IMG/VR virus record: IMGVR_UViG_3300027770_000026
Coordinates: 62,001 to 126,000 of that record
Length of the DNA: 64,000 bases
Direction: 5' to 3' (one strand)
Part shown: positions 27,742 through 53,238 of the stretch, piece after piece
Position numbering within the stretch: position 1 is the first letter of the stretch
Layout of the letters: the number at the start of each line of letters is the position of its first letter
Notes under the pieces: model-generated
The model's input: only the letters and a program-made list of their open reading frames with translations
The model's database searches: none
What the model was told of the DNA's origin: nothing
Position numbers and translations under genes: made by a program

Positions 27742-28089
27742 TTACCAAGTAATGTACCACAGGAACGTGGTGTTGCTAGTTGCTGCGTTTGCTACACGCT
27801 TGATGCCGTAGCCTAATTTACTAAAGTTATCAATCACAGCCTGCATGTTTGCACTTTTAGTATCATCTTCTACTGTGCCTTTCCATACATTGTAATATGC
27901 TTGAGCTGTGGTGAGCGGTGAACCTGCTGTGGTATTGGTCATAGTTGTACTACCACCAACAGCAGGATCGCGTAATGAGCTAGCTTGTATTGCTGCTAGC
28001 ACCGCACTTTCAATGGTGTGTATTTCGTTTAGCACAGTGGTGTTACCTACTGCTTGGCTACGTGCTTGTGTTGCGGTAGGGAAACTCAC
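27742..28089 (-). CDS. putative virion structural protein
   Basis: Thr/Ala-rich, ends F.WYITW; late block. Confidence 0.6.
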   Translation of the reverse strand: MSFPTATQARSQAVGNTTVLNEIHTIESAVLAAIQASSLRDPAVGGSTTMTNTTAGSPLTTAQAYYNVWKGTVEDDTKSANMQAVIDNFSKLGYGIKRVANAATSNTTFLWYITW

Positions 28090-28565
28090 AGACTTCTCCT
28101 CTTAGCAGCACGGGCTGCTGCTTTTCTTAATAGATCTGGACCAGCTGGTGCCTCGATTGCTGCTTCAGGTTCTGCCATAGCAGGCTCTGCACCCATTGGT
28201 GCACCGCCCATACCCATATCACCTTCGGGAGCAGGTTCTTCAGGTGGCATTTCTTCACCTTCGGGCGGCATGTCCATAATGGGTTCAGCTGCGGCTGCAG
28301 CAATGTCCGAGGCAACACCAGTTGCATCTACTTCAATATTGGTTTCGTCAAAGTTGCTAAACTTACTAGCTAGTTCCGGATTACTATTCATTACTGTTTC
28401 TAAATCTGACTTAGATAGTTCACCTGGATAGTCAATCATATGAGCTAATTGAGTGTAGTCGATAGAATAGGGCTCGCCCGTAGTCTTACTACGAGCAAGC
28501 ATAACTCCAATCGCATCTTTGATTCGAGAATTGATAGGATCCTCGATTAGCTCCATTAATCGCAT
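28086..28565 (-). CDS. acidic capsid-tagged protein (core/scaffold-like)
   Basis: MRLMELIE; Pro/Glu/Met-rich region, basic tail. Confidence 0.7.
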   Translation of the reverse strand: MRLMELIEDPINSRIKDAIGVMLARSKTTGEPYSIDYTQLAHMIDYPGELSKSDLETVMNSNPELASKFSNFDETNIEVDATGVASDIAAAAAEPIMDMPPEGEEMPPEEPAPEGDMGMGGAPMGAEPAMAEPEAAIEAPAGPDLLRKAAARAAKRRSL

Positions 28566-28566
28566 T

Positions 28567-29124
28567 TTACTTCTTTTTCTTCTTCTGCATCATTAGCATT
28601 TTAGCTGGCAGCTTCTTCTTAGCGCGTTTGGCTTCAAAAATCTTTCTTTCAATTGATTCAATCATGGCCTTCATTCTGCGCTCACGTGATTCACGCTTGC
28701 TGCGACCCAATGGTTCCTCGCCGCCTGCTGCAGTATCACCCATCGCTGCGCTCATATCCTCTTCACCTTCTGGTGCTGCGCCTTCTTCACCGCCTAGATC
28801 CATTGCTTGCTCAATGTCAGCTTCGCCACCCATTGGCATACTGCCGTCACCTGTGATAGCCAGTGTAGCTTGGTCCACTTGCTTGTTTGATTCTGTAACA
28901 GCGTCAATTGCTGATTGCAATGCATTGCTTACTGCAGTTTCAAACTTAGTTGCTGTATCGTTGTCGATGCTGGAACGTAGACCTTCTTTAATAGCAGGTA
29001 GCTCTTCAACCTTGAGTTTGGTCAACTTTGCTATCATGTCCTGCAGCTGATCTACCATGTCTCTTGCTGCTAGTTGCAGCTGAGCCTTTTCCAATTCACC
29101 TTCTAATAGTGTTTTTAATGACAT
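28567..29124 (-). CDS. acidic coiled-coil prohead core/scaffold-like protein
   Basis: LLE site, acidic linker, LGRSKRES; late promoter upstream. Confidence 0.65.
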   Translation of the reverse strand: MSLKTLLEGELEKAQLQLAARDMVDQLQDMIAKLTKLKVEELPAIKEGLRSSIDNDTATKFETAVSNALQSAIDAVTESNKQVDQATLAITGDGSMPMGGEADIEQAMDLGGEEGAAPEGEEDMSAAMGDTAAGGEEPLGRSKRESRERRMKAMIESIERKIFEAKRAKKKLPAKMLMMQKKKKK

Positions 29125-29149: not shown

Positions 29150-29548
29150 TTAGTCTAAAATATTTAATACCAGCCGCGCAAGCGACTGCATGTGTTCTCT
29201 GTGACGCTGCTCAGCCTGCTGCTGTTTGGCCACAAGTGGATCATCATTATCGTCCACTGCTTTGGCAATAGATTTCATGTGATTATCAAGTGAGCCTGCT
29301 TGCTCATCCAGTTGCTTGATCTGATTAGCAGTATAGTTATCATTCATTTGTAAACACCTTGCATAGCCCATAGCACCCATTCTGGTACTAAAGTTTTCTA
29401 CTACGCCCTTGCCCGTCATTATCCAATTACCTGATTGCCGATGACTGATCTTATAGGGACCAACTCGCACATAACGTGCGCTCTGTTCTCTGTAGGGCAA
29501 TAGATCAAACTGTTCGATAATTCTCTTGACACCGTCTAGCTTTTTCAT
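29150..29548 (-). CDS. hypothetical protein
   Basis: ORF track; ATGA overlap. Confidence 0.65.
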   Translation of the reverse strand: MKKLDGVKRIIEQFDLLPYREQSARYVRVGPYKISHRQSGNWIMTGKGVVENFSTRMGAMGYARCLQMNDNYTANQIKQLDEQAGSLDNHMKSIAKAVDDNDDPLVAKQQQAEQRHREHMQSLARLVLNILD

Positions 29549-29712
29549 TCCACTAACCCCTTTATTTTGAGACTGTGCAGAACGATTTCACGTTCCCGCT
29601 CAGTTAATTTACTCGTTTTTGGGTCATGGCGTAACTTTTTCAACAGGTCGCGTTCCTCATTACTGAGATGAACTTTCATTCGTATCTGACCCGTTAGTTC
29701 GTGTAGTTTCAT
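29545..29712 (-). CDS. small protein (55 aa) with capsid-tag-like start
   Basis: MKLHELTGQIRMKVHLSNEERDLLKKL...; below ORF-track cutoff; fills the gap exactly. Confidence 0.7.
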   Translation of the reverse strand: MKLHELTGQIRMKVHLSNEERDLLKKLRHDPKTSKLTEREREIVLHSLKIKGLVE

Positions 29713-30944: not shown

Positions 30945-31283
30945 TTACTTGGTCAGTGTTGTAGTTGCTACTGTAGCTGAGTTGTTTGCCTCTGTTGCAG
31001 CAACTGCGGTCTGCAATGCTGTAATTGATGTTGCGTCAACTGGACCACCGCTTACACCAAACATCTGCTGTGAACCAGTGTCGTACAATGGGCCAATTGC
31101 TTCAATTGTGTAGCCCATGTTGTCAAACACGCGAAGAACCTGCTGCTGAATACCTGTTACACCAGCTGGTGTTGCACCACTTACGTCGTCGATGTAGTCA
31201 ACAATCAAGAATGTAATATCGCGACCAACTAGCTCAACGCCTGTTGTTGTTGCTGATGGGTTTGCCTTTGAAATACCTGCCAT
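30945..31283 (-). CDS. small virion (decoration-like) protein, paralog A
   Basis: MAGISKANPSAT; TATAAATA, leader hairpin, AGGAG. Confidence 0.7.
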   Translation of the reverse strand: MAGISKANPSATTTGVELVGRDITFLIVDYIDDVSGATPAGVTGIQQQVLRVFDNMGYTIEAIGPLYDTGSQQMFGVSGGPVDATSITALQTAVAATEANNSATVATTTLTK

Positions 31284-31354: not shown

Positions 31355-31993
31355 CTACTTTCCCAGTCTTTTCCCTATCTGATAACCAATTGTTGCCACT
31401 GCACCCACCGTAAGTGCCCACATCAGCAAGCTCTTGCCCATGCTAGTATGGGCTTTTGTGGAGCCAATGTCCAACATGTCGCTTTTTCCGCCAAACGGCC
31501 CGTAGTACCGCGCCATGTCTGCTAGTAATTCTTCACGCTGATGCACAGATAAGTGTTCAAAATCGCCCACGCGACGACGAACACCCGTTAGCATGGAACT
31601 GGATATGTCAAAACTGCGTTGTGCATCCATGGTAAACTTAGCATAGTCTGAATTCTTTGCTCTTCCCACACTAGCATCACGTAGAATTTTCATTAACAAG
31701 GGTATATTGATAACGCCGTGTCTGATGCCTAGCTTGGTGCGATGCTCGGGACTGTTTAATGCTGTGGCTGCGTTGTACAAGTCAGTACCAAACATACGCC
31801 AACGCATGAACATGCCGCTGTCTAGAGAATTCTTTGCATACTTTTGTGCGGCTTTTTCGTTTTGAAACAGTACTACTGCACCAAGTTCTAGAAACAACAA
31901 ACGCATAACACTGTCAGGTCCAACTTTGCTTAGTTGTCCCACGCGGCTTAGTGCCCGTCCTTCGTCTAGTTGTTGTATGAATTCTAATTGCAT
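31355..31993 (-). CDS. late protein with C-terminal TM
   Basis: TAAATA 5 nt before MQLEFIQQLDE; TDLYN motif. Confidence 0.75.
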   Translation of the reverse strand: MQLEFIQQLDEGRALSRVGQLSKVGPDSVMRLLFLELGAVVLFQNEKAAQKYAKNSLDSGMFMRWRMFGTDLYNAATALNSPEHRTKLGIRHGVINIPLLMKILRDASVGRAKNSDYAKFTMDAQRSFDISSSMLTGVRRRVGDFEHLSVHQREELLADMARYYGPFGGKSDMLDIGSTKAHTSMGKSLLMWALTVGAVATIGYQIGKRLGK

Positions 31994-32001
31994 GTGAGTA
32001 T

Positions 32002-32448
32002 TTAGCGTTCGTCAGCTTGTTGCATGAGTTCAACGCTGTCGTCGTCTTGCAGCAGTTCACGAAAGCCTGGATGCATGGGCTTAGGCCAATGTCCGTAGCT
32101 GATCCATTTGAATTCAGAATTTTCCCAGTTCAGCTTTGGTTCAAACTCTTCGAGAACAATTCCCAAGTAATTAAAATATACACTTTCATCTGAGATGTTT
32201 ACTAGCATGGGCATGAGATTGATTTCACCAAAATAGCCTGCTTCTTCACCTACTTCACGAAGCACTGTGGTCTCAGGTGATTCACCTGCTTCCATCTTGC
32301 CACCCCATGTGCTCCAATGATTGGGATAACTTATTTCTCTATTACTACGACGTGCAACACAGAACCTACGTGTCTCGGGGCAGAAGAATATACAGCCTGC
32401 AGCACGACGCTTCGTTTCGTTGGTAGGATGGAACTCATTTATTTTCAT
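32002..32448 (-). CDS. Nudix hydrolase with capsid-tag-like N terminus
   Basis: GGKMEAGESPETTVLREVGEEAG Nudix box; LNWE; MKINEF start. Confidence 0.92.
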   Translation of the reverse strand: MKINEFHPTNETKRRAAGCIFFCPETRRFCVARRSNREISYPNHWSTWGGKMEAGESPETTVLREVGEEAGYFGEINLMPMLVNISDESVYFNYLGIVLEEFEPKLNWENSEFKWISYGHWPKPMHPGFRELLQDDDSVELMQQADER

Positions 32449-33536
32449 TAATAGTTATTCCATACTGATCGAACTTTTTCCAATCCTAAACGAATCTTTT
32501 CTTTGTCGCGATCAGCTTTGGCTTGTGCTTCTGGTGTTGCCGCCTTGGCTCGCTTGCTGGATTCTATATCTCGATTGGCCTTGTCTTCGTATGTGGTCCA
32601 AAATGCATCGCGGAATGCATCGGCGTTGGGGAATGCTTCTAAGTGTCCTTTGCCGTACATGTTGTTTGCAGTAAAGCTACGTGCAAGTCCATGCACGCCT
32701 GCAACCAGGTCACTTATGCGTGAATGCGATGGGTCCATGTGTACCTGTGGATTGACCCCAGGGTGCTGCGTTAGTAGTACGTCTATCTTAGCAGGACCCT
32801 GCTTATCCTGTACCTTATACTCGTGATCAAAAATATCACGGATAAAAGTATCCGGCTCATCTGATAGTGTGTATAAGGTTACATCCTTACGGGTAGTAAA
32901 TGGCACACGCTTGCCGTCTCTTGCTTTGTATTGTACGCCCGCATGTTGTATGCTGAAGCCCAGCAGCTCGCCTAGTACGGAGAACATGTTGCCATGTAGC
33001 AATCCTTTTAGTCCACGCTCGGGTGTGACTCTTGCTTTACCCCAACGCGCATTAGCGTGAGGCATGAGGTCTACTTGTGCGTACATGCTGCCGTTGGTTG
33101 CATCACTGATGTCTAGTATCAAGTGACCACGGAACTGATTTGTACCTTCTTCATTCCTCTTTAGTGTATCTTCGTGTACGTAAGGCGGCTTGGTAGTTTC
33201 GATAAACTCCAACCACTTTGCATACCAATAATTCTGTAGTTGTGTGTATGCTAGTCCTGCGTATAGATCCAACTTGGGAACTTCAATCTGCAGATCCACA
33301 TCACCATATTCTGTATCGGGTTTTTCTTTGAGGTCTTGCCGCCAATGGCTGCTACTACCTGTTGGAGATCCTACACGTATTTCGTGCCAACCTTTATCGT
33401 TGGCGTATGTATTAAAGTCTTGTACAAACTTTTCTACTATTTTAATAATCTTGGGTACTATAGCAGGTGTGAGTCGTGTGCCCTGTGTTACGACACTGTC
33501 CCATCCACCTTCACGTAGTATTTCGCGTATGCGCAT
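32448..33536 (-). CDS. pol-beta-superfamily nucleotidyltransferase-like protein, capsid-tagged
   Basis: MRIREILRE|GG; TGS...YGDVDL...QVDLM. Confidence 0.7.
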   Translation of the reverse strand: MRIREILREGGWDSVVTQGTRLTPAIVPKIIKIVEKFVQDFNTYANDKGWHEIRVGSPTGSSSHWRQDLKEKPDTEYGDVDLQIEVPKLDLYAGLAYTQLQNYWYAKWLEFIETTKPPYVHEDTLKRNEEGTNQFRGHLILDISDATNGSMYAQVDLMPHANARWGKARVTPERGLKGLLHGNMFSVLGELLGFSIQHAGVQYKARDGKRVPFTTRKDVTLYTLSDEPDTFIRDIFDHEYKVQDKQGPAKIDVLLTQHPGVNPQVHMDPSHSRISDLVAGVHGLARSFTANNMYGKGHLEAFPNADAFRDAFWTTYEDKANRDIESSKRAKAATPEAQAKADRDKEKIRLGLEKVRSVWNNY

Positions 33537-34847: not shown

Positions 34848-35849
34848 TTATTTTGCGGAGAAGTGTACTTTGGGCATTGCGTCACGATCGCTACCCCAAA
34901 TCTGTGGAGAAGATACACGCATCTTGTCCATTACGTCTGCAATGTCAGTGAAGTACAGGGAAGTTTGGCTAGGATAGTCTAGCATGAGAATGCCAGAGAA
35001 TCCACTGGTTGCTACGTAATTATAAAAGCTGGACATACCATATCCGCGACGTATACCTTCGAGGTCACCGCGAACTAGTGCGGCATGCAGTTCTGTTGTC
35101 TTATCCGTAAAGCGGAACATGTTCTTGACCACGCTATCAGCTACAGACTTGCGTTGGGGTGCGGTCAGAGTAGGGAAATAGTTTTGCACATAGTCTATCG
35201 CAGTAAGTGATTGCTTGCCCGACAGATCAATGCCAACACTGGTCAGTGTCTGCTCCACGGCCTGTGGCTGAAACTTGGATTTAGCGGGGTCGTACAATCG
35301 ACCAGCATTGACCACACGCGACTTTATTTCAACTGCTTGCTTGCCTACCTGTATGTCGCCGCCGCCTTCGCTGCTGCCTGACCATTTGATATGTGGATTG
35401 AGCAATGCAAATGCTCGCTCGCCAGGACCAATTCCAGCACTTCTGAGCGCACTGTGACTGCTCAGTGAATTAAACAGTGCAACCGACATTGGGCCACCCA
35501 TCATCCAACTGCTAAAAGATTGAATCTGGTTTGTGGCAAGTAGTTCCGATGCATCAACATAGCCCGACGAGCCATAGCTCTTGAGCATGGCTTCTTTGGA
35601 TTCAAAACTGCCCGGTAGTCGTTCCACAATGTCAGTAAATACCGACAGGTGTTCCTTGACCATACCGTTGGCCAATGATATGTTTTCGCAAAGATGTTCG
35701 ATGTGCTTGCGATTAAGAATGGTGTAAACCTGGTTGAGCATTTCCACATCTTCGGATGCATTTACTAGCTTGTTGATTTCCAAACGGATGTCCACTGACA
35801 TCTTGTCAGTATCCTCGATCAGAAACGTATCAAAATCCAAACACTTCAT
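34848..35849 (-). CDS. PD-(D/E)XK restriction-endonuclease-like protein
   Basis: GPGE...GDIQV...VEIK; start MKCLDFDTFLIE (ATGA overlap). Confidence 0.6.
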   Translation of the reverse strand: MKCLDFDTFLIEDTDKMSVDIRLEINKLVNASEDVEMLNQVYTILNRKHIEHLCENISLANGMVKEHLSVFTDIVERLPGSFESKEAMLKSYGSSGYVDASELLATNQIQSFSSWMMGGPMSVALFNSLSSHSALRSAGIGPGERAFALLNPHIKWSGSSEGGGDIQVGKQAVEIKSRVVNAGRLYDPAKSKFQPQAVEQTLTSVGIDLSGKQSLTAIDYVQNYFPTLTAPQRKSVADSVVKNMFRFTDKTTELHAALVRGDLEGIRRGYGMSSFYNYVATSGFSGILMLDYPSQTSLYFTDIADVMDKMRVSSPQIWGSDRDAMPKVHFSAK

Positions 35850-36331
35850 TTTGTACTCCAGACCCATGCAGCACTACGTGCGGCACCAATGGGTGTTTCT
35901 AAGTATGTAGGTATTTTCAGCAGGTCAATGCCCAATGCTTTGCTACACTTAAAGTAGTTATCTTTTCCAACGATTTTTATAAATCCCCGTCCACGATAGT
36001 CCCATCCATCGGGTCGAGGTTCGTTTCCATTGCCATATTTACCACTGTAAACCCGTATGGCAATCTTGTCCTGTTTGTGTTCGTATAGGCTTGCTAGTGT
36101 ATAGTCAGGAAACTGTTTGGGAAAGTGTTTTTGCAAATCTGCAGCAGAATATTTGAAAGTTTCCGTCAATTTAGTTAAATTATCGCTGGCTTTCACAATG
36201 TCAACGATAAAATTGGGGCTATCTATCCTAAATTCTGCCATTGCGTCTAGTATAGCAGGCAGATATTTGTTGGCTAACACAGGTTTGACATTTGGAAACT
36301 GTTCCAAAAATTGTTCTATGGTAATGTGCAT
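35846..36331 (-). CDS. degenerate GH19 lysozyme/chitinase-like protein
   Basis: Y...GNG...DGWDYRGRGFIKIVGKDNY; HES catalytic motif absent. Confidence 0.75.
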   Translation of the reverse strand: MHITIEQFLEQFPNVKPVLANKYLPAILDAMAEFRIDSPNFIVDIVKASDNLTKLTETFKYSAADLQKHFPKQFPDYTLASLYEHKQDKIAIRVYSGKYGNGNEPRPDGWDYRGRGFIKIVGKDNYFKCSKALGIDLLKIPTYLETPIGAARSAAWVWSTK

Positions 36332-45100: not shown

Positions 45101-45720
45101 TACAATTCCTCGGCAAACCAGGGATCAATTACTACCAGTGTGCCGTCTCTGCGCCGCATGACGTTTTCTGTGTGCAAGTCCCAGCCTAAATTATTTAGCA
45201 ATCCGGTGTTGTATAACAGTTGCAGTAGAACATACAGCACATGATACTTTTCCCAAGCACGTGGCTTAATACGTCTGATACTGTTTATTATTTCAGGATT
45301 GTCATACGTAGCCCATTCTGCGGAATCCTGCAGCTTGTGGTGTACCTGCGCCCACTTTATGTCCTTGCGAGCGTATTCACTCAGCTGCCATACTACAGCT
45401 TCTTGTGTGCTGCCCTTGCGCACGGGATATAGTCGTTCCATTGCGATACGGTGATAGTGTATGCCATTGTGTATAAATGGTTCATGATGTTTGCCGCTGG
45501 GTAGTGTATGGAATCTTGGTAGATTTTCAATATCACTGTTACGTTGGCAAAAGTGATAGAACTTCTTAAAGGTGCGTACAGCATGGCTTAGTTTACCTTC
45601 GGGCATGAGTATTTTAATCACATGCTCGCTGCTACTGGTCCACACGCTAGCGTCTGCGCCATGCCCAAGCTTTTTATAGCCCTGACGATGCAGATCATGC
45701 TCTAGATCTTCTAATATCAT
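45100..45720 (-). CDS. Ser/Thr protein kinase-like protein
   Basis: LGHGADASVW, VIKI, MERL, DLHTENVM, VIDP. Confidence 0.85.
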   Translation of the reverse strand: MILEDLEHDLHRQGYKKLGHGADASVWTSSSEHVIKILMPEGKLSHAVRTFKKFYHFCQRNSDIENLPRFHTLPSGKHHEPFIHNGIHYHRIAMERLYPVRKGSTQEAVVWQLSEYARKDIKWAQVHHKLQDSAEWATYDNPEIINSIRRIKPRAWEKYHVLYVLLQLLYNTGLLNNLGWDLHTENVMRRRDGTLVVIDPWFAEEL

Positions 45721-46982
45721 TTGGGCAATTTAACGGGAGTTTGTTTACGAGTCATTAGTGCAGCAAGATCGCTGCGATTAATGTAGCCAATTCTATACTG
45801 TTCCATTGGCGGTAAATCTCGCATAGATTTAAATTTGGCACTTGGTACACTGTATATCAGCTTGTAGACCTTGGTTAGGTATTCTTGTCGATATGCTTGC
45901 GGATCCACAGCAGCTTCTAATGCTACTACCAATCGGTTCACTGTGTCAACGATTTTTTCAACGGGTTCACTAAGCCAATCCCCGCCCGCTGAACGTAGTT
46001 CAATGCGGTCAGACTGAAAGTTAACACTAAGTCTACCAAATATTCGTAGAGCTTTTTGTGCTGCAGCCATATCACCTGTACGTAGTGCATCGGCGATTTC
46101 TAGTTCAGCTGCGGGAGATGCTATTTTACCCGATGCGCGAACACGATTAGCTGCGCTGGGAGCATAGCTATTAAGTTCTCTCTTAAATTGTTTCAGCACA
46201 TATTCATCGCCAAGCAGTGTAATCAACTTGAGATAATCCAGCTTGTCGTAGTTTGGTACGCTGACGTTAATGTGCAGTCCGCAAGTGCGATTGGTTTCTG
46301 CTTTTACTTTATATGCATAAAATTTAACATTATTAATGGCGTCTATAATGTCGTCTACAGCCATGGGATAGCTGACAATCTCCGCACCAATCCATTCTTC
46401 ATTACCGTCGTGGTGTTGCACAGTGCTGTCCGTTTCAAAGGTAAAATGATTGGGTTCACGTGGTCCACCATGTCCATTAAATGGTACAGTGGCATAGCCT
46501 GTTATTTTTGAAAAGCGATCTGCAGCTACTTTTATTTCTTCTAGTGCAGTACTACTAGTGGGATTTTCATAAGGCCAATCCACAATGTGGTCATACCCTT
46601 CATATACTGTCAAAGTATAATCTAGGTCTTCAGCTTCTAGAAAATCTTGCTGTTCATTTTGTACTGCATTACGAATAAATTGTTCGTAGTCATCATCTTC
46701 AATATCCAGTTCTTCTGATAGTGCTACCGCCCAGTCGTGTAGTCTACGTTCAAGCTGGGCGTTCAGTCTCGCAATTGATCCACTGCTATTAACCCCTAAT
46801 TCCCCAAAGAACTCTAGTATTTCGTCAATGCTGGTAACACGACGATTGTAAGTAAAGTCTGGAACAATTACATTATCATCACGTGGAACCAGCATCTCAA
46901 ATTCAATGCCAACTAATGCCTTGCTGCCATAAGCCTGCGCAGCAAGCCGCTGCGAACTCATTTTGATCTCGCTGAGTCTCAT
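45717..46982 (-). CDS. putative amidoligase (COOH-NH2 ligase)
   Basis: GIEFE, ETDST, EIVSYP, TCGLHINVS, IELRSAGG; MRLSEI start. Confidence 0.82.
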   Translation of the reverse strand: MRLSEIKMSSQRLAAQAYGSKALVGIEFEMLVPRDDNVIVPDFTYNRRVTSIDEILEFFGELGVNSSGSIARLNAQLERRLHDWAVALSEELDIEDDDYEQFIRNAVQNEQQDFLEAEDLDYTLTVYEGYDHIVDWPYENPTSSTALEEIKVAADRFSKITGYATVPFNGHGGPREPNHFTFETDSTVQHHDGNEEWIGAEIVSYPMAVDDIIDAINNVKFYAYKVKAETNRTCGLHINVSVPNYDKLDYLKLITLLGDEYVLKQFKRELNSYAPSAANRVRASGKIASPAAELEIADALRTGDMAAAQKALRIFGRLSVNFQSDRIELRSAGGDWLSEPVEKIVDTVNRLVVALEAAVDPQAYRQEYLTKVYKLIYSVPSAKFKSMRDLPPMEQYRIGYINRSDLAALMTRKQTPVKLPK

Positions 46983-48124
46983 TTTTTGTCTAGTTTCAAC
47001 GCAGAACGTGCAATTGCGCTCTTAGCAGTTTCCTCGATTGGTACGCAATTGTTCACACGCACACCATCTTTTACTTTGGTCTTAGGGTTGCCAATCTTTT
47101 TACCTTTCCAGCATTTGGGATCTAGTCGTGTTTTGATTGCTTTCTTTTCCAACAAGTTCTGCTGTTGTTCTGGTGGGCTTTCTTCGTCCCCGCTAGCCCA
47201 CGATATTGGAAAGATACGGCCGAGATTTAATATTTCGTGCCCAACATCATATTCTGTTCCGATGAACTCAGATGCTTTAGACTTTTTCTTAATTTCATCT
47301 GCATTCTTAGCCATTAGTTCCCCTATCTTTTTCATAAGACCGGGAAACAAACTGGCAAACCTTAGATCGTTAATGTCTAGACTATGTCTGTTTTCCTGTT
47401 CCGCATTTACTAACTGACGGGTTGACGCATGCAATTGCCACTTGCCGTTTTTATTCTCAAGATTTGTTTTGTCTGCAATCATGATAATTGGACCGTCAGG
47501 CATGTATCTACGTGACCAAGTTAGTCCGTTGCTACCGCCCGTACAGAAGTTGGCCTGTATGCCTTCAGCATTATTGAACGTATAGCAAGAACCATAGTTG
47601 TAGGGAATCATTATATAGAAACGATCATCGTTCATTAGCACAGTTTCGCTTCTCTCACGCTTGTGCTTTTCAACCATTTCTTGATTCTTAATTTGATCCA
47701 ATTGCGAGCTGTACTTGCGCATGGCTTTTTGTATGTCTTCAATGTTTTTAAATCTATTAAAGTCCTGATCCTTAGGCTCTAGCAAAGACCGTATGTTAAG
47801 TGCATGCCATTTGCCCAGCGTGTCTGCAGCTTCGCCGCTGATGTCTTCCCAGTTTGCATGTCCGTTTGCATACTGGCGTGCAACCCATAGGTCAAACTTA
47901 CCGCCCGACAAGTCACCATAGTTACTGGTGCTCATTACTCGATCCAGCATGTCGCTCCAGGCTTGTACGATTTTCTGTTCACTGGGACGTGGTCCCAACT
48001 TGGCAACTACATAGGGAGGAAGTGTGCCATCTGTATTCCAGTTAATCGCTATGAACTTGGCTAGTCTGGGATCTGCTTTTAGCTTTTCTGCAACGTTTGC
48101 TTCTAGTATTTTTTCTAATCTCAT
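46979..48124 (-). CDS. capsid-tagged FCT-motif (PcfJ-like) protein with C-terminal CWKG...NCVP module
   Basis: MRLEKILE; ANFCTG...Y..DGPI...KWQLH; LLE|...CWKG...VNNCVPIEE. Confidence 0.7.
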   Translation of the reverse strand: MRLEKILEANVAEKLKADPRLAKFIAINWNTDGTLPPYVVAKLGPRPSEQKIVQAWSDMLDRVMSTSNYGDLSGGKFDLWVARQYANGHANWEDISGEAADTLGKWHALNIRSLLEPKDQDFNRFKNIEDIQKAMRKYSSQLDQIKNQEMVEKHKRERSETVLMNDDRFYIMIPYNYGSCYTFNNAEGIQANFCTGGSNGLTWSRRYMPDGPIIMIADKTNLENKNGKWQLHASTRQLVNAEQENRHSLDINDLRFASLFPGLMKKIGELMAKNADEIKKKSKASEFIGTEYDVGHEILNLGRIFPISWASGDEESPPEQQQNLLEKKAIKTRLDPKCWKGKKIGNPKTKVKDGVRVNNCVPIEETAKSAIARSALKLDKK

Positions 48125-49133: not shown

Positions 49134-50090
49134 CTATTCGTCTAGATCAGTGATGTTCAATCCTAGACGTTTGAGGTCTCGCATGTAGCGATGTTCCTCT
49201 TCCTCACTGCCAAAACTCAGCATGGTTTGCGGCGGGCCTGTACCAAAGTCCTTAGGATCTGCGTCATCTAGATCGTTGATATGTGTGCCCAGCTTGTACC
49301 AGTCGTATACGTCGCGTACACCCACTTTTACTGTACCTTTGGGGAAGGGAATTAAACTATGCTTGTGACTTTCTTCGCCCTCTTCGCCTTGCTCATCGTC
49401 GGCGTCTTCGTTGGTTTGTTCAGCATCGTCTACATCTTTTTTGTACTTTTTGTACAGCTCGCGTCTACGATCCAAATGACTCAACCCTGCATTAATTTTG
49501 CGGGTAGTAGCGGTCATACCTTTCTTTACCGTATTACCTACACGGGACTTCCAATACCATACTGCAATTCGTGCTGCATGTTTAGGTTCTGCTGCTAGGT
49601 CAGGATTGTTTACTAGGTCTAAGCCCAGTGCTTTGCCAGCTTTAGCGTAGTTATAACGTCCAGTTAATTGAATGTAACCTCGGCCGTGGAACAGTTCTCC
49701 ATCCCCGTCTTCTGTGTTGCCCAATAACTTTGCAGTTGTGGGATTGTATTTCTTTTCGTACTTGTGAAAGTGTGGATCATTATCGTTTGGCGTTTCGTGC
49801 ATGCGAGTAAAGCCCATGCTTTCGTGTGCTGTATGTGCTAGAAACTGTGCAAGCTCGTCGCCCGCCATCTTTGCATCAAGTGCTGCACGTAGTATTATGC
49901 GCTCGGGCTGTAGTAGTTCGTGCGCAGAATGAATCACTTGAACAGGGTTAGCACCAAGTTCTTGTTTGTAGTGATCCAATACGCCCTTGCTGATTGCGCC
50001 AATTCCAAATGCTGCAAGTAGAATAGCTCCAATCTTTTCCTTAATCGATGCTTCTTCTAGTGTTTGTTCAGTAAGCTCATGTGCTCGCAT
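49134..50090 (-). CDS. capsid-tagged GH19 lysozyme/chitinase with extra C-terminal module
   Basis: AQFLAHTAHES, FHGRGYIQLTGRYNY, AVWYW, TRKINAG; MRAHELTE. Confidence 0.9.
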   Translation of the reverse strand: MRAHELTEQTLEEASIKEKIGAILLAAFGIGAISKGVLDHYKQELGANPVQVIHSAHELLQPERIILRAALDAKMAGDELAQFLAHTAHESMGFTRMHETPNDNDPHFHKYEKKYNPTTAKLLGNTEDGDGELFHGRGYIQLTGRYNYAKAGKALGLDLVNNPDLAAEPKHAARIAVWYWKSRVGNTVKKGMTATTRKINAGLSHLDRRRELYKKYKKDVDDAEQTNEDADDEQGEEGEESHKHSLIPFPKGTVKVGVRDVYDWYKLGTHINDLDDADPKDFGTGPPQTMLSFGSEEEEHRYMRDLKRLGLNITDLDE

Positions 50091-52091
50091 TTACCACTTC
50101 CTACAAGACCAATAACGAGCTTTGGTTCTTGGTCCCGGAGTTTCGCAGTGATGACGTGCGCGGAAGCTTCTACGGCGGGCAGGATTGCTCTTCTTGATGC
50201 GCATGTTAGGATCGCCAAAGTTTACTTTCTTAATGTTGCCAGTCTTGGGATCCTTCACATAGACCTTAAATTTTTTAACATCGCCCTGCATGGGTTTACC
50301 CAATTGCACCTTGTGTCCGTGATATTCAGCTTCCATGATAGAGGAAGCATCTAGCATGGCCATTGTTGCGTTGTCTGCAGCTAGTAGTACAGTGTCGTGA
50401 TTGGCACGTAGCACTGTGGTTTCGATCAGTGTGTTGCCCATTTCAATAAAGAATACGTCGCCTTCGGATACATCTTCACTCTTGTTATTCTTGTGTTGAA
50501 ACAGATTGAATGCTTGACGAGCTGTTGCTGGCATGCTACCGATGTAGAATTTCATTGCAGGGACTCTGTCATACTGCTTAGTTAATACAGTCTCTGGCTT
50601 ATCCAGGTTTACTGTTGCTGTCATCTCACCGTCGCGTGATTTTATTGTAAGTGTTGCTTTAGTGGCATCAATTTTCTCAAACTTTATGACGAGGAAGGTC
50701 CCAGATATGCCATCGCCAATACCAGAGTGATTCTTTACTTTAACACGAATTGGCTGATCTTTGTAAGCATCATACCATTCCATGTCAGCATTGCTACCAT
50801 GCCATTTAGGATCTGCTGAGTTTCCTGTTCCCTCTTCCATTGGTCCAGCTTGTCCTGCACGACGTTGATTAGCGTCTAGTTTTTCAGACACACGTTGTCC
50901 TAGTTGCTTTTTAATCCATGGTATTACTGTATCGTTAATATACTTTTGTGCAGCAGGATCATCGTTAGGGTCTACCCCAGGCTTTAGTTTAGGCAAGGAT
51001 TTCAATTGTGACAGAATCTTTCCTTTAACTGCTGGATCAGCTTTGCTAAGTGCTATGCTGATAAATTGTTCACCTTCTTGGTGTCTACCTTGCATAAAAT
51101 ACACTATTGCTTTGGCTAGTTTAGCATCGCTAAATCCAGCACCCATAGCACCAAACGCTCCGCCTATCTGATTACCGGTATTTTCTTCTACATCCTGTTC
51201 GTGTATTGGATCACCATATTCAGTCCAACGGTCGTGTTTTGGATCAAAAATGGGTTTGTCGTTAATAGCAGCATCGCGGAACATTTTAGCTATTTCCTTG
51301 CTCATGCCGTACTTGTCTTCAAACTCTTCGTCACTTATGTTGGGATCATGTATGTCGTCGTCAATTTCTGGGTTGTCTAGCTCGGCGTCAAGTCTTGACA
51401 TTTTGCTTTCATGTACTGTAGCTGGCTCTAGGTCTGCTAGATCAACTTCTGATCCAACAGGCTCATGGCCATCATCAATTTCAAAATCTACTAGCGCAGC
51501 ATTGTCGGCTAATAGCTTTACTAGCACGCCATATAGTTCTGGATGACCTTTGACTCTGACTTCATCACCTGGACTAAAACGTGCAGGCATGTTTATTTGT
51601 TTTTCCGTAATATGAGGGCGTGGGCCAGCAGGAGTTGGCTCTGCCTTAGTTGGCTTGACTTCCCATTTGCGCCCAGTTTGTACACTCTTTCGATTGCACA
51701 TTTTTTCTAATCTATCCATCTCACTACGTTGTGCAAGGCTATTGTCTGGGCCTGCACCCTTAAATACTCGCCACGAACGACCGTTAATAAAGACTTGAAA
51801 GTTTGTAGTTACCGCAGTCGAAGCTGAAGGGGTAATAGTATCATTTGGTTCCTGAGAAGTTGATCGCCATGACCATACTTTGCCGCTCTCTGCAGTTTTG
51901 CGTTGGCACATGCCTGCTATACGATTTTCCTCACGCACCTGTTCGGGACTGTCATCCGGACCTTTACCTGGCAATATCTTCCAAGGTTGACCGTCGATAC
52001 GTATTTCAAAATTGTTTACTTCATGTTCTACGCCATGATTGCGGTCGCGGCTGGCCATATTCTCGTTAACTTGTATATCGTGTAGTCTCAT
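50091..52091 (-). CDS. capsid-tagged multi-module polyprotein
   Basis: MRLHDIQVNE; duplicated NF.I.I.G..W...G.GPD.S..Q...C.RK....G..W module; C-terminal basic FG.PNM...RR.SFRARH.C...ARYWSC module. Confidence 0.75.
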   Translation of the reverse strand: MRLHDIQVNENMASRDRNHGVEHEVNNFEIRIDGQPWKILPGKGPDDSPEQVREENRIAGMCQRKTAESGKVWSWRSTSQEPNDTITPSASTAVTTNFQVFINGRSWRVFKGAGPDNSLAQRSEMDRLEKMCNRKSVQTGRKWEVKPTKAEPTPAGPRPHITEKQINMPARFSPGDEVRVKGHPELYGVLVKLLADNAALVDFEIDDGHEPVGSEVDLADLEPATVHESKMSRLDAELDNPEIDDDIHDPNISDEEFEDKYGMSKEIAKMFRDAAINDKPIFDPKHDRWTEYGDPIHEQDVEENTGNQIGGAFGAMGAGFSDAKLAKAIVYFMQGRHQEGEQFISIALSKADPAVKGKILSQLKSLPKLKPGVDPNDDPAAQKYINDTVIPWIKKQLGQRVSEKLDANQRRAGQAGPMEEGTGNSADPKWHGSNADMEWYDAYKDQPIRVKVKNHSGIGDGISGTFLVIKFEKIDATKATLTIKSRDGEMTATVNLDKPETVLTKQYDRVPAMKFYIGSMPATARQAFNLFQHKNNKSEDVSEGDVFFIEMGNTLIETTVLRANHDTVLLAADNATMAMLDASSIMEAEYHGHKVQLGKPMQGDVKKFKVYVKDPKTGNIKKVNFGDPNMRIKKSNPARRRSFRARHHCETPGPRTKARYWSCRKW

Positions 52092-52390
52092 AGCTTTTTA
52101 ATACTCTTAATGAACTCAGTAAGGTCAGTATCACTGACATCACTTGCTTGTTCTTCTATACGACGAAGACTGTTAGTAAATTTACTAGCATCTCGCGCAC
52201 GTACTGCATTTAGTAACTTGCGTTCTAGGTTTTCTGCAGTTTCGCGGTCGTAAGATTCGTGAATGCTATCAAGAAAATTAATAAAACTACTCAGCACGTG
52301 ACTGGCACGGCTATTGATTACTTCCTGGCGACTCTTATTTGGTACCAAGTCATTAATCTCTTCAAGTATGCTGCGAGTTTTACGCTTCAT
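52088..52390 (-). CDS. conserved late phage protein
   Basis: MKRKTRSILEEI...L.R..LNA.R.RD..KF. Confidence 0.75.
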   Translation of the reverse strand: MKRKTRSILEEINDLVPNKSRQEVINSRASHVLSSFINFLDSIHESYDRETAENLERKLLNAVRARDASKFTNSLRRIEEQASDVSDTDLTEFIKSIKKL

Positions 52391-52401
52391 ATATGTTACT
52401 C

Positions 52402-53238
52402 TTAGATGTTATCTAGTTTCTGAGCAAATTCACTTAGAATTTGATCGTCAATACTTTCTTTGACAATTTTAACCTGCTGCGGGCCAAGTTTCTTCATGCC
52501 GCCTGCCTTTTGTGTAGCTTGTCTTGCTTGTGCTGCTTGCCCGCGTTGTGCAATTGTTTGGCGTTCGGGTTTAGGAGCAGCTGGTTGTGGTTCAGGCGCA
52601 GCGGGTGCTGGTTGTGGTTGTGGTTCAGGCGCAGCGGGTGCTGGTTGTGGTTGCGGGGCAGGTGCAGCAGGTGCTGGTTGTGGTTGTGGTTCAGGCGCAG
52701 CGGGTGCTGGTTGTGGTTGCGGGGCAGGTGCAGCAGGTTGTGGTTCAGGTGCTGCTTGCTGAGGTGTAGGTTGTAGTTGTGGTGTAGGTTGTACTTGGGG
52801 AGCAGCGGTTTGTGGCTGGTCCTGTGCAGCTTGCTGATTGCCTCCACTTTGTGGATTTGCTACAGCATCTCTACGAGAAGACTGCTGTAAATATCCAACT
52901 AGTACTTTACCCAGCTGGCGCATGCTTAATTTTGCATCACCGTCAATTCCTGCTTTCTGTATAGCAGTATTCATTATGCCCTGATCAAATCTACCTTGCT
53001 GGATGCTAACTACATTAACGAGATCATTGGCGCTTACGGCCCGTTCGCCCGATTGCCCCATCCATTTCTTTACCTGCTTGTATAGATTGTTAGCTTCGTG
53101 CGCTACATCTAGCTTACCTAAGGCTTTCTGACTGCCAAGTGTTGCGCCTAGCTTATATAAGCCTCGCTTCCATAGCGGCACTGCACCTATCTCATCGAGA
53201 AATTCTTGTTCTTTAACAGCAAATTCAGAAATCTTCAT
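52402..53238 (-). CDS. capsid-tagged protein with Pro/Gln/Ala linker
   Basis: MKISEF...LDE; PQPAPAAPE repeats; late promoter and GGAG. Confidence 0.75.
   Translation of the reverse strand: MKISEFAVKEQEFLDEIGAVPLWKRGLYKLGATLGSQKALGKLDVAHEANNLYKQVKKWMGQSGERAVSANDLVNVVSIQQGRFDQGIMNTAIQKAGIDGDAKLSMRQLGKVLVGYLQQSSRRDAVANPQSGGNQQAAQDQPQTAAPQVQPTPQLQPTPQQAAPEPQPAAPAPQPQPAPAAPEPQPQPAPAAPAPQPQPAPAAPEPQPQPAPAAPEPQPAAPKPERQTIAQRGQAAQARQATQKAGGMKKLGPQQVKIVKESIDDQILSEFAQKLDNI
52604..52735. repeat. perfect 2 x 66-bp tandem duplication within the PQPA linker
   Basis: 52604-52669 is identical to 52670-52735. Confidence 0.9.

What the first reader, a model, noticed from the sequence alone, without database searches (positions are those of the whole stretch)
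28086..53238. About 20 proteins share a T4-IP-like capsid targeting peptide: an injected enzyme payload
Seen N termini: MKIHDILTE, MRASEFITE, MKLTEIGE, MKIHELLE, MRLMELIE, MKLHEL, MKINEF, MRIREILRE, MKCLDFDTFLIE, MKIREIRIVE, MKISEV, MRLSEI, MRLEKILE, MRAHELTE, MRLHDIQVNE, MKISEF, MRATEFITE, and weaker ones (MQLEFIQQLDE, MSLKTLLE, MILEDLE). Some lie outside this interval. Known: T4 internal proteins use MKTYQEFIAE-type tags removed by prohead protease after E. Inference: kinases, a nucleotidyltransferase, Nudix, HAD nucleotidase, amidoligase, nuclease, GH19 and a Cys-protease-like domain are packaged and delivered at infection.
Basis: partly seen in the sequence, partly recalled or inferred. 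Interest (0 to 1): 0.8.

Follow-up and report, generated by a model that had tools for sequence, protein, structure and literature searches.

The report
Capsid-targeting tags on giant-phage cargo
About twenty unrelated proteins of an uncultured freshwater giant phage begin with the same short peptide that phage T4 uses to load proteins into its head and then clip off, so this phage probably ships a set of enzymes into its host together with its DNA, and the peptide lets such shipped proteins be predicted from sequence alone.

Summary
Sixteen of 85 genes in the window start M-[KR]-Φ-x-[ED]-Φ, against 1 of 403 internal Met residues (p=3e-12), and all 16 have Φ-x-E within residues 5-13. A seventeenth copy lies in-frame inside one ORF, and four weaker tags exist. 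The tagged proteins are unrelated beyond the tag, and conservation is at the amino-acid level. The window belongs to a 266-kb freshwater phage contig. I walked that contig to its head module, which has the T4 order: Portal_T4, small core proteins, Peptidase_S77 (gp21 family), scaffold, Gp23. T4's gp21 cuts after L/I-x-E. In homologs of the tagged amidoligase, a 5-19 aa propeptide always ends in E (53/53) with L/I at P3 (53/53), just before the conserved mature start. Two other cargo families behave the same way. In cultured relatives with virion proteomes, tagged proteins are in particles: Atu_ph07 16/16, including gp196, a homolog of the window's amidoligase; PA5oct 5/6. Tail, neck and terminase genes are untagged. 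The T4-type capsid-targeting reading is therefore well supported. Cleavage and injection remain inferred. I found no prior description for this clade.

The parts
6540..8681 (+). Tagged ORF of 713 aa, MKIHDILTE|. It carries a second in-frame tag at 7368 (MRASEFITE|), followed by a kinase-like stretch and a Pterin_4a/DCoH domain. A TATAAATA element ends 5 nt before the ATG.
14220..14759 (+). Tagged NT5C-type (HAD) 5'-deoxynucleotidase, MKLTEIGE|. The domain starts at residue 13 (profile position 4). A TTAAATA element ends 5 nt before the ATG.
22670..22876 (-). Tagged 68-aa protein, MKIHELLE|. The Phosso counterpart starts MKAIEILSE.
28086..28565 (-). Tagged 159-aa acidic protein, MRLMELIE|. No family assigned.
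28567..29124 (-). Weakly tagged 185-aa protein, MSLKTLLE|. Homolog of the MS-detected virion proteins PA5oct gp237 and Atu_ph07 gp44; phrog_14154 'virion structural protein'.
29545..29712 (-). Tagged 55-aa protein, MKLHE|L (only the Φ3-x-E5 site). The Phosso counterpart starts MRFYEIKGG.
31355..31993 (-). Weakly tagged 212-aa protein, MQLEFIQQLDE|. A CTAAATA element ends 5 nt before the ATG.
32002..32448 (-). Tagged NUDIX hydrolase, MKINE|F. The domain starts at residue 13 (profile position 2).
32448..33536 (-). Tagged 362-aa protein, MRIREILRE|. No family assigned.
34848..35849 (-). Tagged 333-aa protein, MKCLDFDTFLIE|. No family assigned.
35846..36331 (-). 161-aa protein starting MHITIEQFLE| (the 10-residue register of the T4 IPs), with a GH19-like C-terminal part similar to 49134-50090.
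37037..37903 (-). Tagged 288-aa protein, MKIREIRIVE|. Ortholog (34% identity) of PA5oct gp205, which is itself tagged (MKLFEVFTLYE) and MS-detected in virions. A CTAAATA element lies 21 nt upstream.
44165..45100 (-). Tagged 311-aa protein, MKISE|V. No family assigned; a ParB_N-like hint is only a lead.
45100..45720 (-). Weakly tagged 206-aa protein, MILEDLE. Sub-threshold matches to Kinase-PolyVal and APH(6).
45717..46982 (-). Tagged amidoligase (Amidoligase_2), MRLSE|IKMSS. Homolog of Atu_ph07 gp196, a virion protein detected by MS with 14 peptides.
46979..48124 (-). Tagged 381-aa protein, MRLEKILE|ANVAEK. Member of a family with 1,624 homologs in which E8-A9-N10 is invariant. In the AF2 model the tag is disordered and the fold starts at about residue 10. 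No PDB fold match.
49134..50090 (-). Tagged GH19 muramidase/chitinase-like protein, MRAHELTE|, followed by a membrane-like segment (residues 20-38). 99 of 120 homologs are tagged, with consensus MRAxEFITE.
50091..52091 (-). Tagged 666-aa modular protein, MRLHDIQVNE|. The C-terminal 83 aa form a widespread basic Cys/His module (phrog_7595).
52402..53238 (-). Tagged 278-aa protein, MKISEFAVKE|. It is the first gene after the helicase. A CTAAATA element lies 22 nt upstream.
61312..61929 (+). Tagged 205-aa basic protein, MRATEFITE|. A CTAAATA element ends 4 nt before the ATG. Weak DUF6934 hit.
53283..54713 (-). DnaB/gp41-type helicase. It is the conserved anchor that bounds the tagged cluster here and in PA5oct, Phosso, Atu_ph07 and about 80 IMG/VR relatives. 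It is not tagged.
25374..26987 (-). Tail-fibre-like protein (Mtd_N plus pectate-lyase fold) at the other end of the cluster. Its N-terminal ~35 aa (Mtd_N part) match PA5oct gp241, an MS-detected virion protein. It is untagged and serves as a control: a virion protein outside the head lacks the tag.

Best explanation
The shared N-terminus is a T4-type capsid targeting sequence (CTS), that is, a cleavable propeptide.

PROPOSED MECHANISM:
1. Late in infection the tagged proteins are made together with the head proteins.
2. The short amphipathic peptide (Met, basic, hydrophobic, x, acidic, hydrophobic ... hydrophobic-x-Glu) takes them into the scaffolding core of the assembling prohead.
3. The gp21-family prohead protease (Peptidase_S77) cuts after the Glu of L/I/V-x-E.
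4. The mature proteins stay inside the DNA-filled head and leave it with the DNA at the next infection.

PAYLOAD: it includes a Nudix hydrolase, an NT5C deoxynucleotidase, an amidoligase, a GH19 cell-wall hydrolase, a basic Cys/His-module protein and a dozen proteins of unknown fold.

SHOWN HERE: the tag and its statistics; its modularity; the T4-type head module and protease in this same genome; the invariant L/I-x-E junction in three cargo families; virion residence of tagged homologs in two cultured relatives.

INFERRED: binding to the core, actual cleavage, and ejection into the host.
For: 1. TAG STATISTICS AND MODULARITY.
2. T4 COMPARISON: the T4 record gives IPII/IPIII MKTYQEFIAE|A, IPI MKTFKEF...ITE|A, gp24 MAKINELLRE|S, gp22 MLKEQLIAE|A. 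The window has MRASEFITE|, MRATEFITE|, MKIHELLE|, MRIREILRE|.
3. T4 RULES FROM THE LITERATURE: gp21 cleaves after L/I-X-E, and the CTS is a 10-19 aa propeptide sufficient for packaging (PMC9026906).
4. HEAD MODULE IN THIS GENOME: the source contig at 211.8-217.6 kb carries Portal_T4, a 76-aa protein (MHLRDLME|), a 249-aa protein (..QLLE|), Peptidase_S77, a 363-aa protein and Gp23 (..EALLE|G).
5. AMIDOLIGASE FAMILY: P1=E in 53/53 and P3=L/I in 53/53, directly before the conserved mature start. Propeptide length is 5-19 aa, and two homologs start at the mature MSP.
6. OTHER FAMILIES: in the 46979 family E8-A9-N10 is invariant and 104/120 are tagged. In the GH19 family 99/120 are tagged, with 73 distinct tags.
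7. STRUCTURE: in the AF2 model only residues 1-9 at the N-terminus are disordered.
8. PROTEOMES OF RELATIVES: in Atu_ph07, 14/14 tagged proteins of the syntenic cluster versus 14/33 untagged are MS-positive (p=1.8e-4), plus gp196 and gp199. In PA5oct, 5/6 versus a baseline of about 25% (p=0.004).
9. CLADE-WIDE: the small protein after the portal starts M[KR]A[KR][DE]LLVE in 30 loci, and 31 unrelated families carry the tag.
10. NEGATIVE CONTROLS: terminase, sheath, gp13, gp15, baseplate, fibres, replication genes and the PA5oct early region carry no full tag.
11. LATE PROMOTER: NTAAATA precedes the structural operons and the tagged genes.
Against: - There is no direct evidence for this phage: no virions, no N-terminal peptides, no ejection assay.
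- The published proteomes of the relatives give protein lists only, so cleavage at the predicted site is not shown anywhere in this clade.
- Virion MS lists also contain likely contaminants (RNR and thymidylate synthase in PA5oct), so MS presence is imperfect evidence.
- The GH19 cargo has a membrane-like segment after the tag, and a few homologs have Tat-like motifs. That fits an exported lysin at least as well as a head-internal protein.
- A 46-member subfamily of the 46979 family (MRLDQLEQHLK) lacks a hydrophobic P3.
- One tagged PA5oct protein (gp271) was not detected in virions.
- Φ-x-E is a short motif (0.019 per residue), so single sites mean little on their own.
Confidence: 0.8

Rival explanations
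1. The tag is only a protease-recognition or latency peptide. It marks proteins to be clipped, or kept inactive until clipped, by the prohead protease, while targeting to the head is achieved by other means or does not occur for the enzymes.
For: The best-conserved feature is the Φ-x-E junction. Φ3-x4-E5 of the tag head is itself a potential cleavage site, and in the window's amidoligase it is the only one.
Against: gp21-type proteases act inside the prohead (established T4 knowledge, PMC9026906), so a substrate has to be there anyway. The head of the tag (Met-basic...acidic-hydrophobic) is conserved in addition to the cleavage site, even when a linker of up to 10 residues separates the two. 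Tagged proteins are in virions of relatives.
Confidence: 0.08
2. The tag is an N-terminal degron or recognition signal for the phage-encoded AAA+ machinery (ClpX/ClpS, plus tmRNA), or another regulatory N-terminal signal. It would control the stability of late proteins rather than their packaging.
For: The phage encodes ClpS, ClpX and a tmRNA. PA5oct and Atu_ph07 encode further Clp components. From my own knowledge, a Met-basic-hydrophobic N-terminus resembles one class of ClpX N-terminal motifs.
Against: Tagged proteins accumulate in virions of two relatives. The tag sits on the core proteins next to the portal in 30 or more loci. The invariant L/I-x-E junction before the mature domain has no role in a degron model.
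Confidence: 0.04
3. Many of the tagged proteins are prohead core or scaffold components that are degraded or expelled during maturation, like T4 gp22, gp67 and gp68. The tag then marks head assembly, not an injected payload.
For: The tag is ancestral on the small core proteins beside the portal. Several tagged window proteins are small (55-68 aa) or acidic and have no enzyme fold.
Against: Tagged proteins with complete enzyme folds exist: NUDIX, NT5C, amidoligase, GH19. Atu_ph07 gp196 and gp53-63 are detected in mature virions with many peptides. This rival is compatible with the main explanation for a subset of the proteins.
Confidence: 0.06
4. The motif is an mRNA-level or translation-initiation signal (A-rich second codon, leaderless late mRNAs), or the remnant of a repeated DNA cassette or a shared paralogous domain.
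For: Several tagged genes look leaderless or lack a Shine-Dalgarno sequence. AAA and AGA second codons are common.
Against: Six codons are used at position 2 and eight at position 6, and third-position identity is 0.37. Propeptides of variable length keep the junction. There is no similarity beyond the tag. Leaderless untagged genes exist (57231-, 43406-).
Confidence: 0.02

Closest known systems
T4 capsid targeting sequence (CTS) of internal proteins IPI, IPII, IPIII, Alt and gp24 (Mullaney and Black; reviewed in PMC9026906, PMC3012670)
   Same: A short N-terminal propeptide on otherwise unrelated proteins. It has the same architecture (Met-basic ... E-Φ-Φ-x-E) and ends in L/I-x-E. The phage has a gp21-family protease, a T4-order head module and a T4-type late-promoter motif. 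The tagged proteins are virion proteins in relatives.
   Different: The commonest register is one residue shorter (MRAxEFITE against MKTYQEFIAE), and length varies from 5 to 19 aa. T4 tags about five proteins, mostly small basic non-enzymes. This phage tags 20 or more, including complete enzymes of up to 713 aa, and the system is spread over a clade of uncultured 250-490 kb phages. Function has not been tested here.
phiKZ / 201phi2-1 / SPN3US inner-body and ejection proteins (PMC5694885, PMC10052503)
   Same: Giant phages that package many proteins in the head. These are processed by a diverged gp21 homolog after Glu.
   Different: Their propeptides are mostly more than 100 residues long and the motif is S/A/G-x-E. 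There is no shared short N-terminal tag. They form a different phage lineage (virion RNAP, nucleus-forming). This phage has a close T4-type Gp23 and Peptidase_S77 recognised by Pfam.
Polyvalent proteins and MuF/portal-fused effectors; predicted head-packaged Nudix, Macro and ART enzymes (Iyer et al., PMC9503650, PMC7824862)
   Same: The idea is that phages deliver enzymes (Nudix, kinases, nucleotide-targeting enzymes) with their DNA. Similar enzyme classes are involved, and one cargo has a weak Kinase-PolyVal match.
   Different: In those systems packaging is inferred from fusion to structural domains or from gene neighbourhood. Here separate proteins each carry a small detachable address label.
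T7 gp14/15/16 and P22 ejection proteins (my own knowledge, not tested here)
   Same: These are head-internal proteins that are ejected. One (T7 gp16) combines a muralytic domain with membrane insertion, as the tagged GH19 with its hydrophobic segment might.
   Different: There is no sequence relationship, no cleavable tag, and the assembly pathway differs.

Membership tests
T4-type CTS propeptide system | Short (about 10-19 aa) N-terminal extension shared by otherwise unrelated proteins | tested here: met
   There are 16 gene starts plus 1 internal copy and 4 weaker ones. No similarity remains after the tag is removed. The Pfam NUDIX and NT5C domains begin at residue 13. In the AF2 model only residues 1-9 are disordered.
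T4-type CTS propeptide system | Extension ends in the gp21 cleavage motif L/I-x-E | tested here: met
   16/16 tagged versus 12/69 untagged proteins have Φ-x-E at residues 5-13. In amidoligase homologs P1=E in 53/53 and P3=L/I in 53/53. E8 is invariant in the 46979 family. The motif is as stated in PMC9026906.
T4-type CTS propeptide system | Phage encodes a gp21-family prohead protease within a T4-type core/scaffold module | tested here: met
   The same contig carries Portal_T4, 76-aa and 249-aa proteins, Peptidase_S77, a 363-aa protein and Gp23 at 211.8-217.6 kb. The same order is seen in PA5oct and Atu_ph07, with tblastn hits to T4 gp20, gp21 and gp23.
T4-type CTS propeptide system | Tagged proteins reside in the mature virion (head) | tested here: met
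   This holds for cultured relatives only. In Atu_ph07, 16/16 tagged proteins are in the ESI-MS/MS virion list, including gp196, a homolog of window 45717-46982. In PA5oct, 5/6. Head versus tail location was not resolved, and this phage itself was not examined.
T4-type CTS propeptide system | Propeptide is actually removed by the protease | not testable with these tools
   The published proteomes give protein lists without peptide-level N-termini.
T4-type CTS propeptide system | Tag is sufficient to package a foreign protein | not testable with these tools
   This requires a tag-reporter fusion in PA5oct or Atu_ph07.
T4-type CTS propeptide system | Late expression together with head genes | tested here: inconclusive
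   NTAAATA (compare the T4 late promoter TATAAATA, from my own knowledge) precedes the structural operons and the tagged genes or cluster. No time-resolved RNA data exist. One metatranscriptome shows only that the phage is transcribed.
T4-type CTS propeptide system | Cargo is ejected into the host with the DNA | not testable with these tools
   Inferred from T4 IPs and Alt (PMC9026906).
phiKZ-like inner-body/ejection protein propeptides | Long (over 100 aa) propeptides cleaved at S/A/G-x-E | tested here: not met
   Propeptides here are 5-19 aa, and P3 is L/I/V. The definition is from PMC5694885.
SAR- or Tat-exported endolysin (for the GH19 cargo only) | N-terminal weakly hydrophobic signal-anchor or twin-arginine signal preceding the muralytic domain | tested here: inconclusive
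   The window GH19 has a hydrophobic 19-mer (KD 1.96) at residues 20-38. Of the tagged homologs, 31/99 have a weaker stretch and 6/99 have RRxFL. The contig also has a separate GH19+Peptidase_M15 gene and a 1464-aa GH19 baseplate-region gene.

The most novel reading that the evidence does not exclude
The peptide is a general, portable address label of the T4-related virosphere, and it turns the phage head into a delivery vehicle with an exchangeable payload. Thousands of metagenomic proteins carry it: hundreds among the top hits of only three families, in two registers, including the exact T4 register MKTFKDYLAE. That would allow sequence-only prediction of the injected first-minute arsenal of uncultured phages. 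The arsenal would include enzymes that act on nucleotide pools and signals (Nudix, NT5C), peptide- or metabolite-ligating amidoligases, and cell-wall hydrolases that carry their own export signal and would be re-exported after injection.
Probability: 0.35. Interest if true: 0.85.

Novelty: new variant of a known kind. Interest (0 to 1): 0.72.

Why it matters
Proteins that a phage injects with its DNA act before any phage gene is expressed. They are therefore prime candidates for anti-defence and host-takeover functions, but so far they can only be found by virion proteomics of cultured phages.

If this short tag works as in T4, it is a sequence-only predictor of packaged proteins for a large clade of uncultured giant phages. 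Relatives include the Pseudomonas, Agrobacterium and Sinorhizobium phages PA5oct, Atu_ph07 and Phosso.

It would also explain why these phages have 90-130 'virion' proteins of unknown role. It points to dozens of new enzyme and unknown-fold families as early effectors. It shows that T4's handful of internal proteins is the small end of a much larger, modular cargo system. Finally, it offers natural variants of a protein-packaging signal that is already used in T4 engineering.

Tried and rejected
- NEAR-IDENTICAL DNA SEARCH against GenBank phages found nothing. The phage is known only from metagenomes.
- PARALOGY of the tagged proteins is rejected.
- A DNA-LEVEL REPEAT OR CASSETTE is rejected.
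- HEAD MODULE LOCATION: I expected the head module beside NUDIX/gp15, as in PA5oct. It was not within contig 62-177 kb. Walking was blocked by a 4802-aa gene, and I stepped across it with fragment queries. One exact-protein look-up failed on a truncated ORF.
- PFAM, NCBIFAM AND PHROGS leave most cargo unassigned.
- THE ATLAS gave only weak leads for 44165-45100 and 46979-48124.
- FOLDSEEK against PDB found no match for the 46979-family model.
- PDB SEQUENCE SEARCH did not support 'kinase' for 45100-45720.
- PEPTIDE-LEVEL PROTEOMICS for PA5oct are not held, so cleavage could not be checked.
- NCBI-DERIVED AMIDOLIGASE HOMOLOG on a 339-kb contig: cluster look-up gave no name, and tblastn found only partial matches in Atu_ph07 and RsoM2USA.
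- RNA RUNS: one metatranscriptome holds only fragments of three highly expressed genes, so there is no information on cargo genes or transcript starts.
- LITERATURE SEARCHES with several vocabularies found no description of this tag outside T4-like coliphages.
- COUNTS ACROSS HOMOLOGOUS LOCI were confounded by orthology, and one scrambled control motif also scored often. I therefore counted families instead.


Full report
WHAT THE WINDOW IS

The window is phage DNA, with genes mostly on the minus strand. It has no near-identical relative among 50,697 GenBank phage records.

It comes from a 265,892-bp contig, IMG/VR UViG_3300027770_000026, which is JGI Ga0209086_10000003. Window position 1 is contig position 62,001. 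The same phage occurs at 100% identity in two other samples and in several freshwater metagenomes.

By UvsW and helicase similarity (47-51% identity), its closest cultured relatives are the giant myophages Sinorhizobium phage Phosso, Agrobacterium phage Atu_ph07 and the Pseudomonas PA5oct group. Iyer et al. place this group among jumbo phages with a gp23-type capsid and T4-type late sigma (PMC7824862). A two-piece betaproteobacterial tmRNA suggests a betaproteobacterial host.

THE OBSERVATION

- A six-frame scan of all ATG codons for M-[KR]-[ILVACM]-x-[EDK]-[ILFVM] returns 17 hits. All are at the start of a long ORF, except one in-frame copy inside ORF 6540-8681.
- That is 16 of 85 gene starts against 1 of 403 internal methionines (p=3e-12). 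Shuffling the N-terminal 40 residues gives 0.23 hits on average and never more than 3.
- All 16 tagged proteins have hydrophobic-x-Glu ending at residues 5-13, against 12 of 69 untagged ones (p=4e-10).

Conservation is in the peptide, not the DNA. Six codons serve position 2 and eight serve position 6, and third-position identity is 0.37. Once the first 14 residues are removed, the tagged proteins are mutually unrelated. In the two cargo proteins with clean Pfam domains, NUDIX and NT5C, the domain begins at residue 13. The tag is therefore an add-on of about ten residues.

COMPARISON WITH T4, FROM THE T4 RECORD ITSELF

| T4 protein | N-terminus |
|---|---|
| IPII, IPIII | MKTYQEFIAE\|A |
| IPI | MKTFKEFTST...ITE\|A |
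| gp24 | MAKINELLRE\|S |
| gp22 | MLKEQLIAE\|A |
| gp67 | MEGLIE\|A |
| gp21 | MNEPQLLIE\|T |

The window's MRASEFITE, MRATEFITE, MKIHELLE, MRLMELIE and MRIREILRE have the same build, usually one residue shorter.

The T4 review states three things (PMC9026906). First, gp21 cleaves after L/I-X-E. Second, the IP propeptides are 10-19 residues long and were named capsid targeting sequences because the first 10 residues of IPIII suffice for incorporation. Third, targeting depends mainly on residues 4 and 7, and processing on residues 8 and 10.

DOES THIS PHAGE HAVE THE MACHINERY?

The head module is not in the window. I walked the source contig with exact-protein look-ups and two fragment queries. 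The assembled 160 kb (contig 62,001-221,761) has no mismatch in any overlap.

At 211.8-217.6 kb lies the head module, in exactly the T4 gene order 20-67-68-21-22-23:

| Protein | N-terminus |
|---|---|
| Portal_T4 (576 aa) | – |
| 76 aa | MHLRDLME\| |
| 249 aa | MSKKFEQLLE\| |
| Peptidase_S77 (210 aa) | MSALLRE\|..AILE\| |
| 363 aa | ..GMLSE\| |
| Gp23 (396 aa) | MSNTLLE\|..EALLE\|G |

PA5oct and Atu_ph07 have the same module, with tblastn matches to T4 gp20, gp21 and gp23.

THE JUNCTION TEST

If the tag is a propeptide, its end should be fixed relative to the mature protein while its length is free.

- **Amidoligase (45717-46982).** The Amidoligase_2 identity is supported at atlas score 0.95 and TM 0.77. 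Its 68 homologs are 30-86% identical. Fifty-three have the conserved mature start (I/V)xM(S/N)P. In all 53 the preceding residue is Glu, and P3 is Leu (47) or Ile (6). The extension is 5-19 residues long, and 46 begin M[KR]xx[EDKQ]Φ. Three apparent exceptions are mis-called starts with the tag Met inside, and two homologs start at the mature MSP.
- **46979-48124 family.** It has 1,624 homologs, and 104 of the best 120 are tagged. The mature start ANVAAK is always preceded by Φ-x-E after a variable propeptide. E8, A9 and N10 are invariant in a 40-sequence alignment. In the AF2 model (mean pLDDT 79) only residues 1-9 of the N-terminus are below pLDDT 50, and the fold begins at about residue 10.
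- **GH19 family.** Of the best 120 homologs, 99 are tagged, with 73 distinct tags and the consensus M-R-A-x-E-F-I-T-E.
- **C-terminal module of 50091-52091.** Many proteins sharing it start in the exact T4 register, for example MTKTFKDYLAE, MKNFRDYLAE and MKSLREYIAE.

Across the IMG/VR loci I fetched, 31 unrelated families carry the full tag. The largest is the small protein just after the portal, M[KR]A[KR][DE]LLVE in 30 loci.

ARE TAGGED PROTEINS IN PARTICLES?

Two cultured relatives have virion proteomes.

- **PA5oct.** The GenBank record flags MS-detected proteins. Of six gene starts with the full tag, five are flagged: gp150 MKINDIITE, gp175, gp205 MKLFEVFTLYE, gp237 and gp238 (GTG start, MKIKDILVE). 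The baseline is about 89 of 355 (p=0.004). gp205 is the ortholog of window 37037-37903. The PA5oct paper never mentions N-termini.
- **Atu_ph07.** Supplementary Table S5 of PMC6102473 lists 131 virion proteins. In the cluster that ends at the helicase, which is syntenic with the window's cluster, all 14 proteins with the tag head are listed. These are gp43, 46, 47 and 53-63, for example MRWEQLTE, MKWHQLTE and MRLIDLLE. Fourteen of 33 untagged neighbours are listed (p=1.8e-4).
- **Beside the Atu_ph07 portal.** The tagged small protein gp199 (MKLTELFNPLTE) and gp196 are also listed. gp196 starts MRWQDISSKKLTE|LKMNS and has 14 peptides at 30% coverage. It aligns with the window's amidoligase at E=3e-21.
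- **Combined.** Sixteen of 16 against a genome-wide rate of 131/714 gives about 1e-12.

CONTROLS

In the 96 kb of the same genome outside the window, none of the following is tagged: terminase, sheath, gp13, gp15, baseplate, fibres, the giant 4802-aa protein, RecA. Only five or six further tagged ORFs appear, including MKIQELLQE, MRSREFITE and (V/M)RVVEFITE. The tag is therefore not a property of late or structural genes in general.

The PA5oct early region has one head-only match and no full tag.

NTAAATA resembles the T4 late promoter TATAAATA (my own knowledge). It precedes the first genes of the structural operons of this phage. It also precedes the tagged genes, including all three isolated plus-strand tagged genes, where it ends 4-5 nt before the ATG.

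WHAT THE PAYLOAD IS

| Status | Proteins |
|---|---|
| Confirmed | NUDIX (32002-32448), NT5C/HAD nucleotidase (14220-14759), amidoligase (45717-46982), GH19 (49134-50090, and a GH19-like tail in 35846-36331), Pterin_4a/DCoH domain in the 6540-8681 ORF |
| Weak | 'Kinase' for 45100-45720 and the related stretch after the internal tag at 7368 |
| Not tagged | 36339-37037 (the likely 'nucleotidyltransferase'; phrog_36119, unknown function) and 27031-27729 (homolog of a PA5oct 'putative exonuclease', not MS-detected) |
| Not found | Any Cys-protease-like domain |
| Unassigned | About a dozen tagged proteins with no family; the 46979 family has no PDB fold match |

GH19 homologs fused to NT5C, DUF6934, GNAT or LysM show that these cargo domains travel together. 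Atu_ph07 virions contain three Nudix-type enzymes.

WHAT DOES NOT FIT, OR IS OPEN

- The GH19 cargo has a membrane-like segment after its tag. A third of tagged homologs have a weaker one, and six have a Tat-like motif. This may mean a membrane-inserting ejection protein, or an exported lysin whose tag has another role.
- A 46-member subfamily of the 46979 family lacks a hydrophobic P3.
- Cleavage and ejection are not shown in this clade. The MS lists contain probable contaminants.
- Sequence alone cannot separate a targeting role for the tag head from a second cleavage site (Φ3-x-E5).
- A Clp-degron reading cannot be excluded formally, but it does not explain virion residence or the junction.

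NOVELTY

The concept is known. [quoted passage not shown] Iyer et al. predicted head-packaged Nudix, ART and Macro enzymes from fusions and neighbourhoods (PMC9503650).

Six full-text searches found no description of this tag in the PA5oct, Atu_ph07 or Rak2-related giant phages or in metagenomic phages. They also found no report of a phage with about 20 CTS-tagged proteins that include full-size enzymes.

VERDICT

This is a new, much expanded variant of a known mechanism. My confidence that the tag is a T4-type CTS/propeptide is 0.8. My confidence that the enzymes are actually delivered into the host is lower, about 0.6, and rests on the T4 precedent.

Noticed in passing
window 8659-9038 (-); also 16541-16843 (-) and 17617-18861 (-): The phage encodes a two-piece (permuted) betaproteobacterial-type tmRNA (Rfam RF01850/RF04321; tag peptide ANDSNYDMALAA), together with ClpS and ClpX homologs. 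This hints at a freshwater betaproteobacterial host and at phage control of proteolysis.
   Followed up: partly
window 34755-34834 (-): A 'freshwater-2' RNA motif (RF02980, 64.7 bits) sits in the leader of the strongly signalled 387-aa gene 33594-34757, just downstream of a CTAAATA element. A metatranscriptome contig covers it. Its function is unknown.
   Followed up: partly
window ATGs at 6540+, 14220+, 61312+, 57231-, 43406-, 36331-, 31993-: The late-promoter-like NTAAATA ends only 4-6 nt before the start codon, so these late mRNAs would be leaderless or nearly so. The same holds for the terminase gene outside the window.
   Followed up: partly
window 6540-8681 (+), internal site at 7368: One 713-aa ORF carries two tags: one at its start and one in-frame at residue 277 (..KGFG-MRASEFITE-TPLD). 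It could be a fusion of two cargo genes, an internal start, or an internal protease site that would release two mature proteins.
   Followed up: partly
window 50091-50339 (-), i.e. residues 584-666 of the 666-aa protein: The C-terminal basic Cys/His module (..FGDPNMRIKKSNPARRRSFRARHHCETPGPRTKARYWSCRKW; phrog_7595) has 3,937 hits. These are often 80-90% identical and always C-terminal, on unrelated N-terminal parts. They include pelagiphages, roseophages and Nitrosopumilaceae spindle-shaped viruses. It is an unusually conserved mobile module of unknown function.
   Followed up: partly
window 49134-50090 (-): The GH19 cargo has a transmembrane-like segment (residues 20-38) right after the tag. 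Some tagged homologs have Gly/Ala-rich hydrophobic stretches or a Tat-like SRRGFLGG..AQA motif.
   Followed up: partly
window 37933-44168 (-): A run of six untagged 243-432 aa proteins, with weak pairwise similarity among five of them. It sits where Atu_ph07 has its tagged, virion-detected ~30-kDa paralogs gp55-62. No homology between the two sets was detectable.
   Followed up: partly
window 8997-9746 / 9749-10507 (-), and 55736-56440 / 56452-56796 / 56800-57231 (-): There are tandem paralogs: a 55% identical pair, and a triplet at 36-47% identity. Their functions are unknown.
   Followed up: no
window 30445-30837 and 30945-31283 (-): Two paralogous small proteins with strong Shine-Dalgarno sites and upstream ATAAATA. 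They are among the few genes seen in the lake metatranscriptome, so they are probably abundant virion proteins. Their N-termini resemble PA5oct gp233/gp234, but no significant alignment was obtained.
   Followed up: partly
source contig outside the window: about 174.4-188.8 kb, and L183:3147-7541: There is a 4,802-aa protein (YHYH, CBM_5_12 hints) next to the baseplate genes, and a 1,464-aa baseplate-region protein with a GH19 domain. The genome therefore has at least four GH19-containing genes.
   Followed up: no
Atu_ph07 Table S5 (PMC6102473) and GH19 homologs P0249, P0287, P0301, P0247: Atu_ph07 virions contain three Nudix-type enzymes (gp238, gp257, gp303). Metagenomic GH19 homologs are fused to NT5C, DUF6934, GNAT or LysM, which links the cargo domains to one another.
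   Followed up: partly
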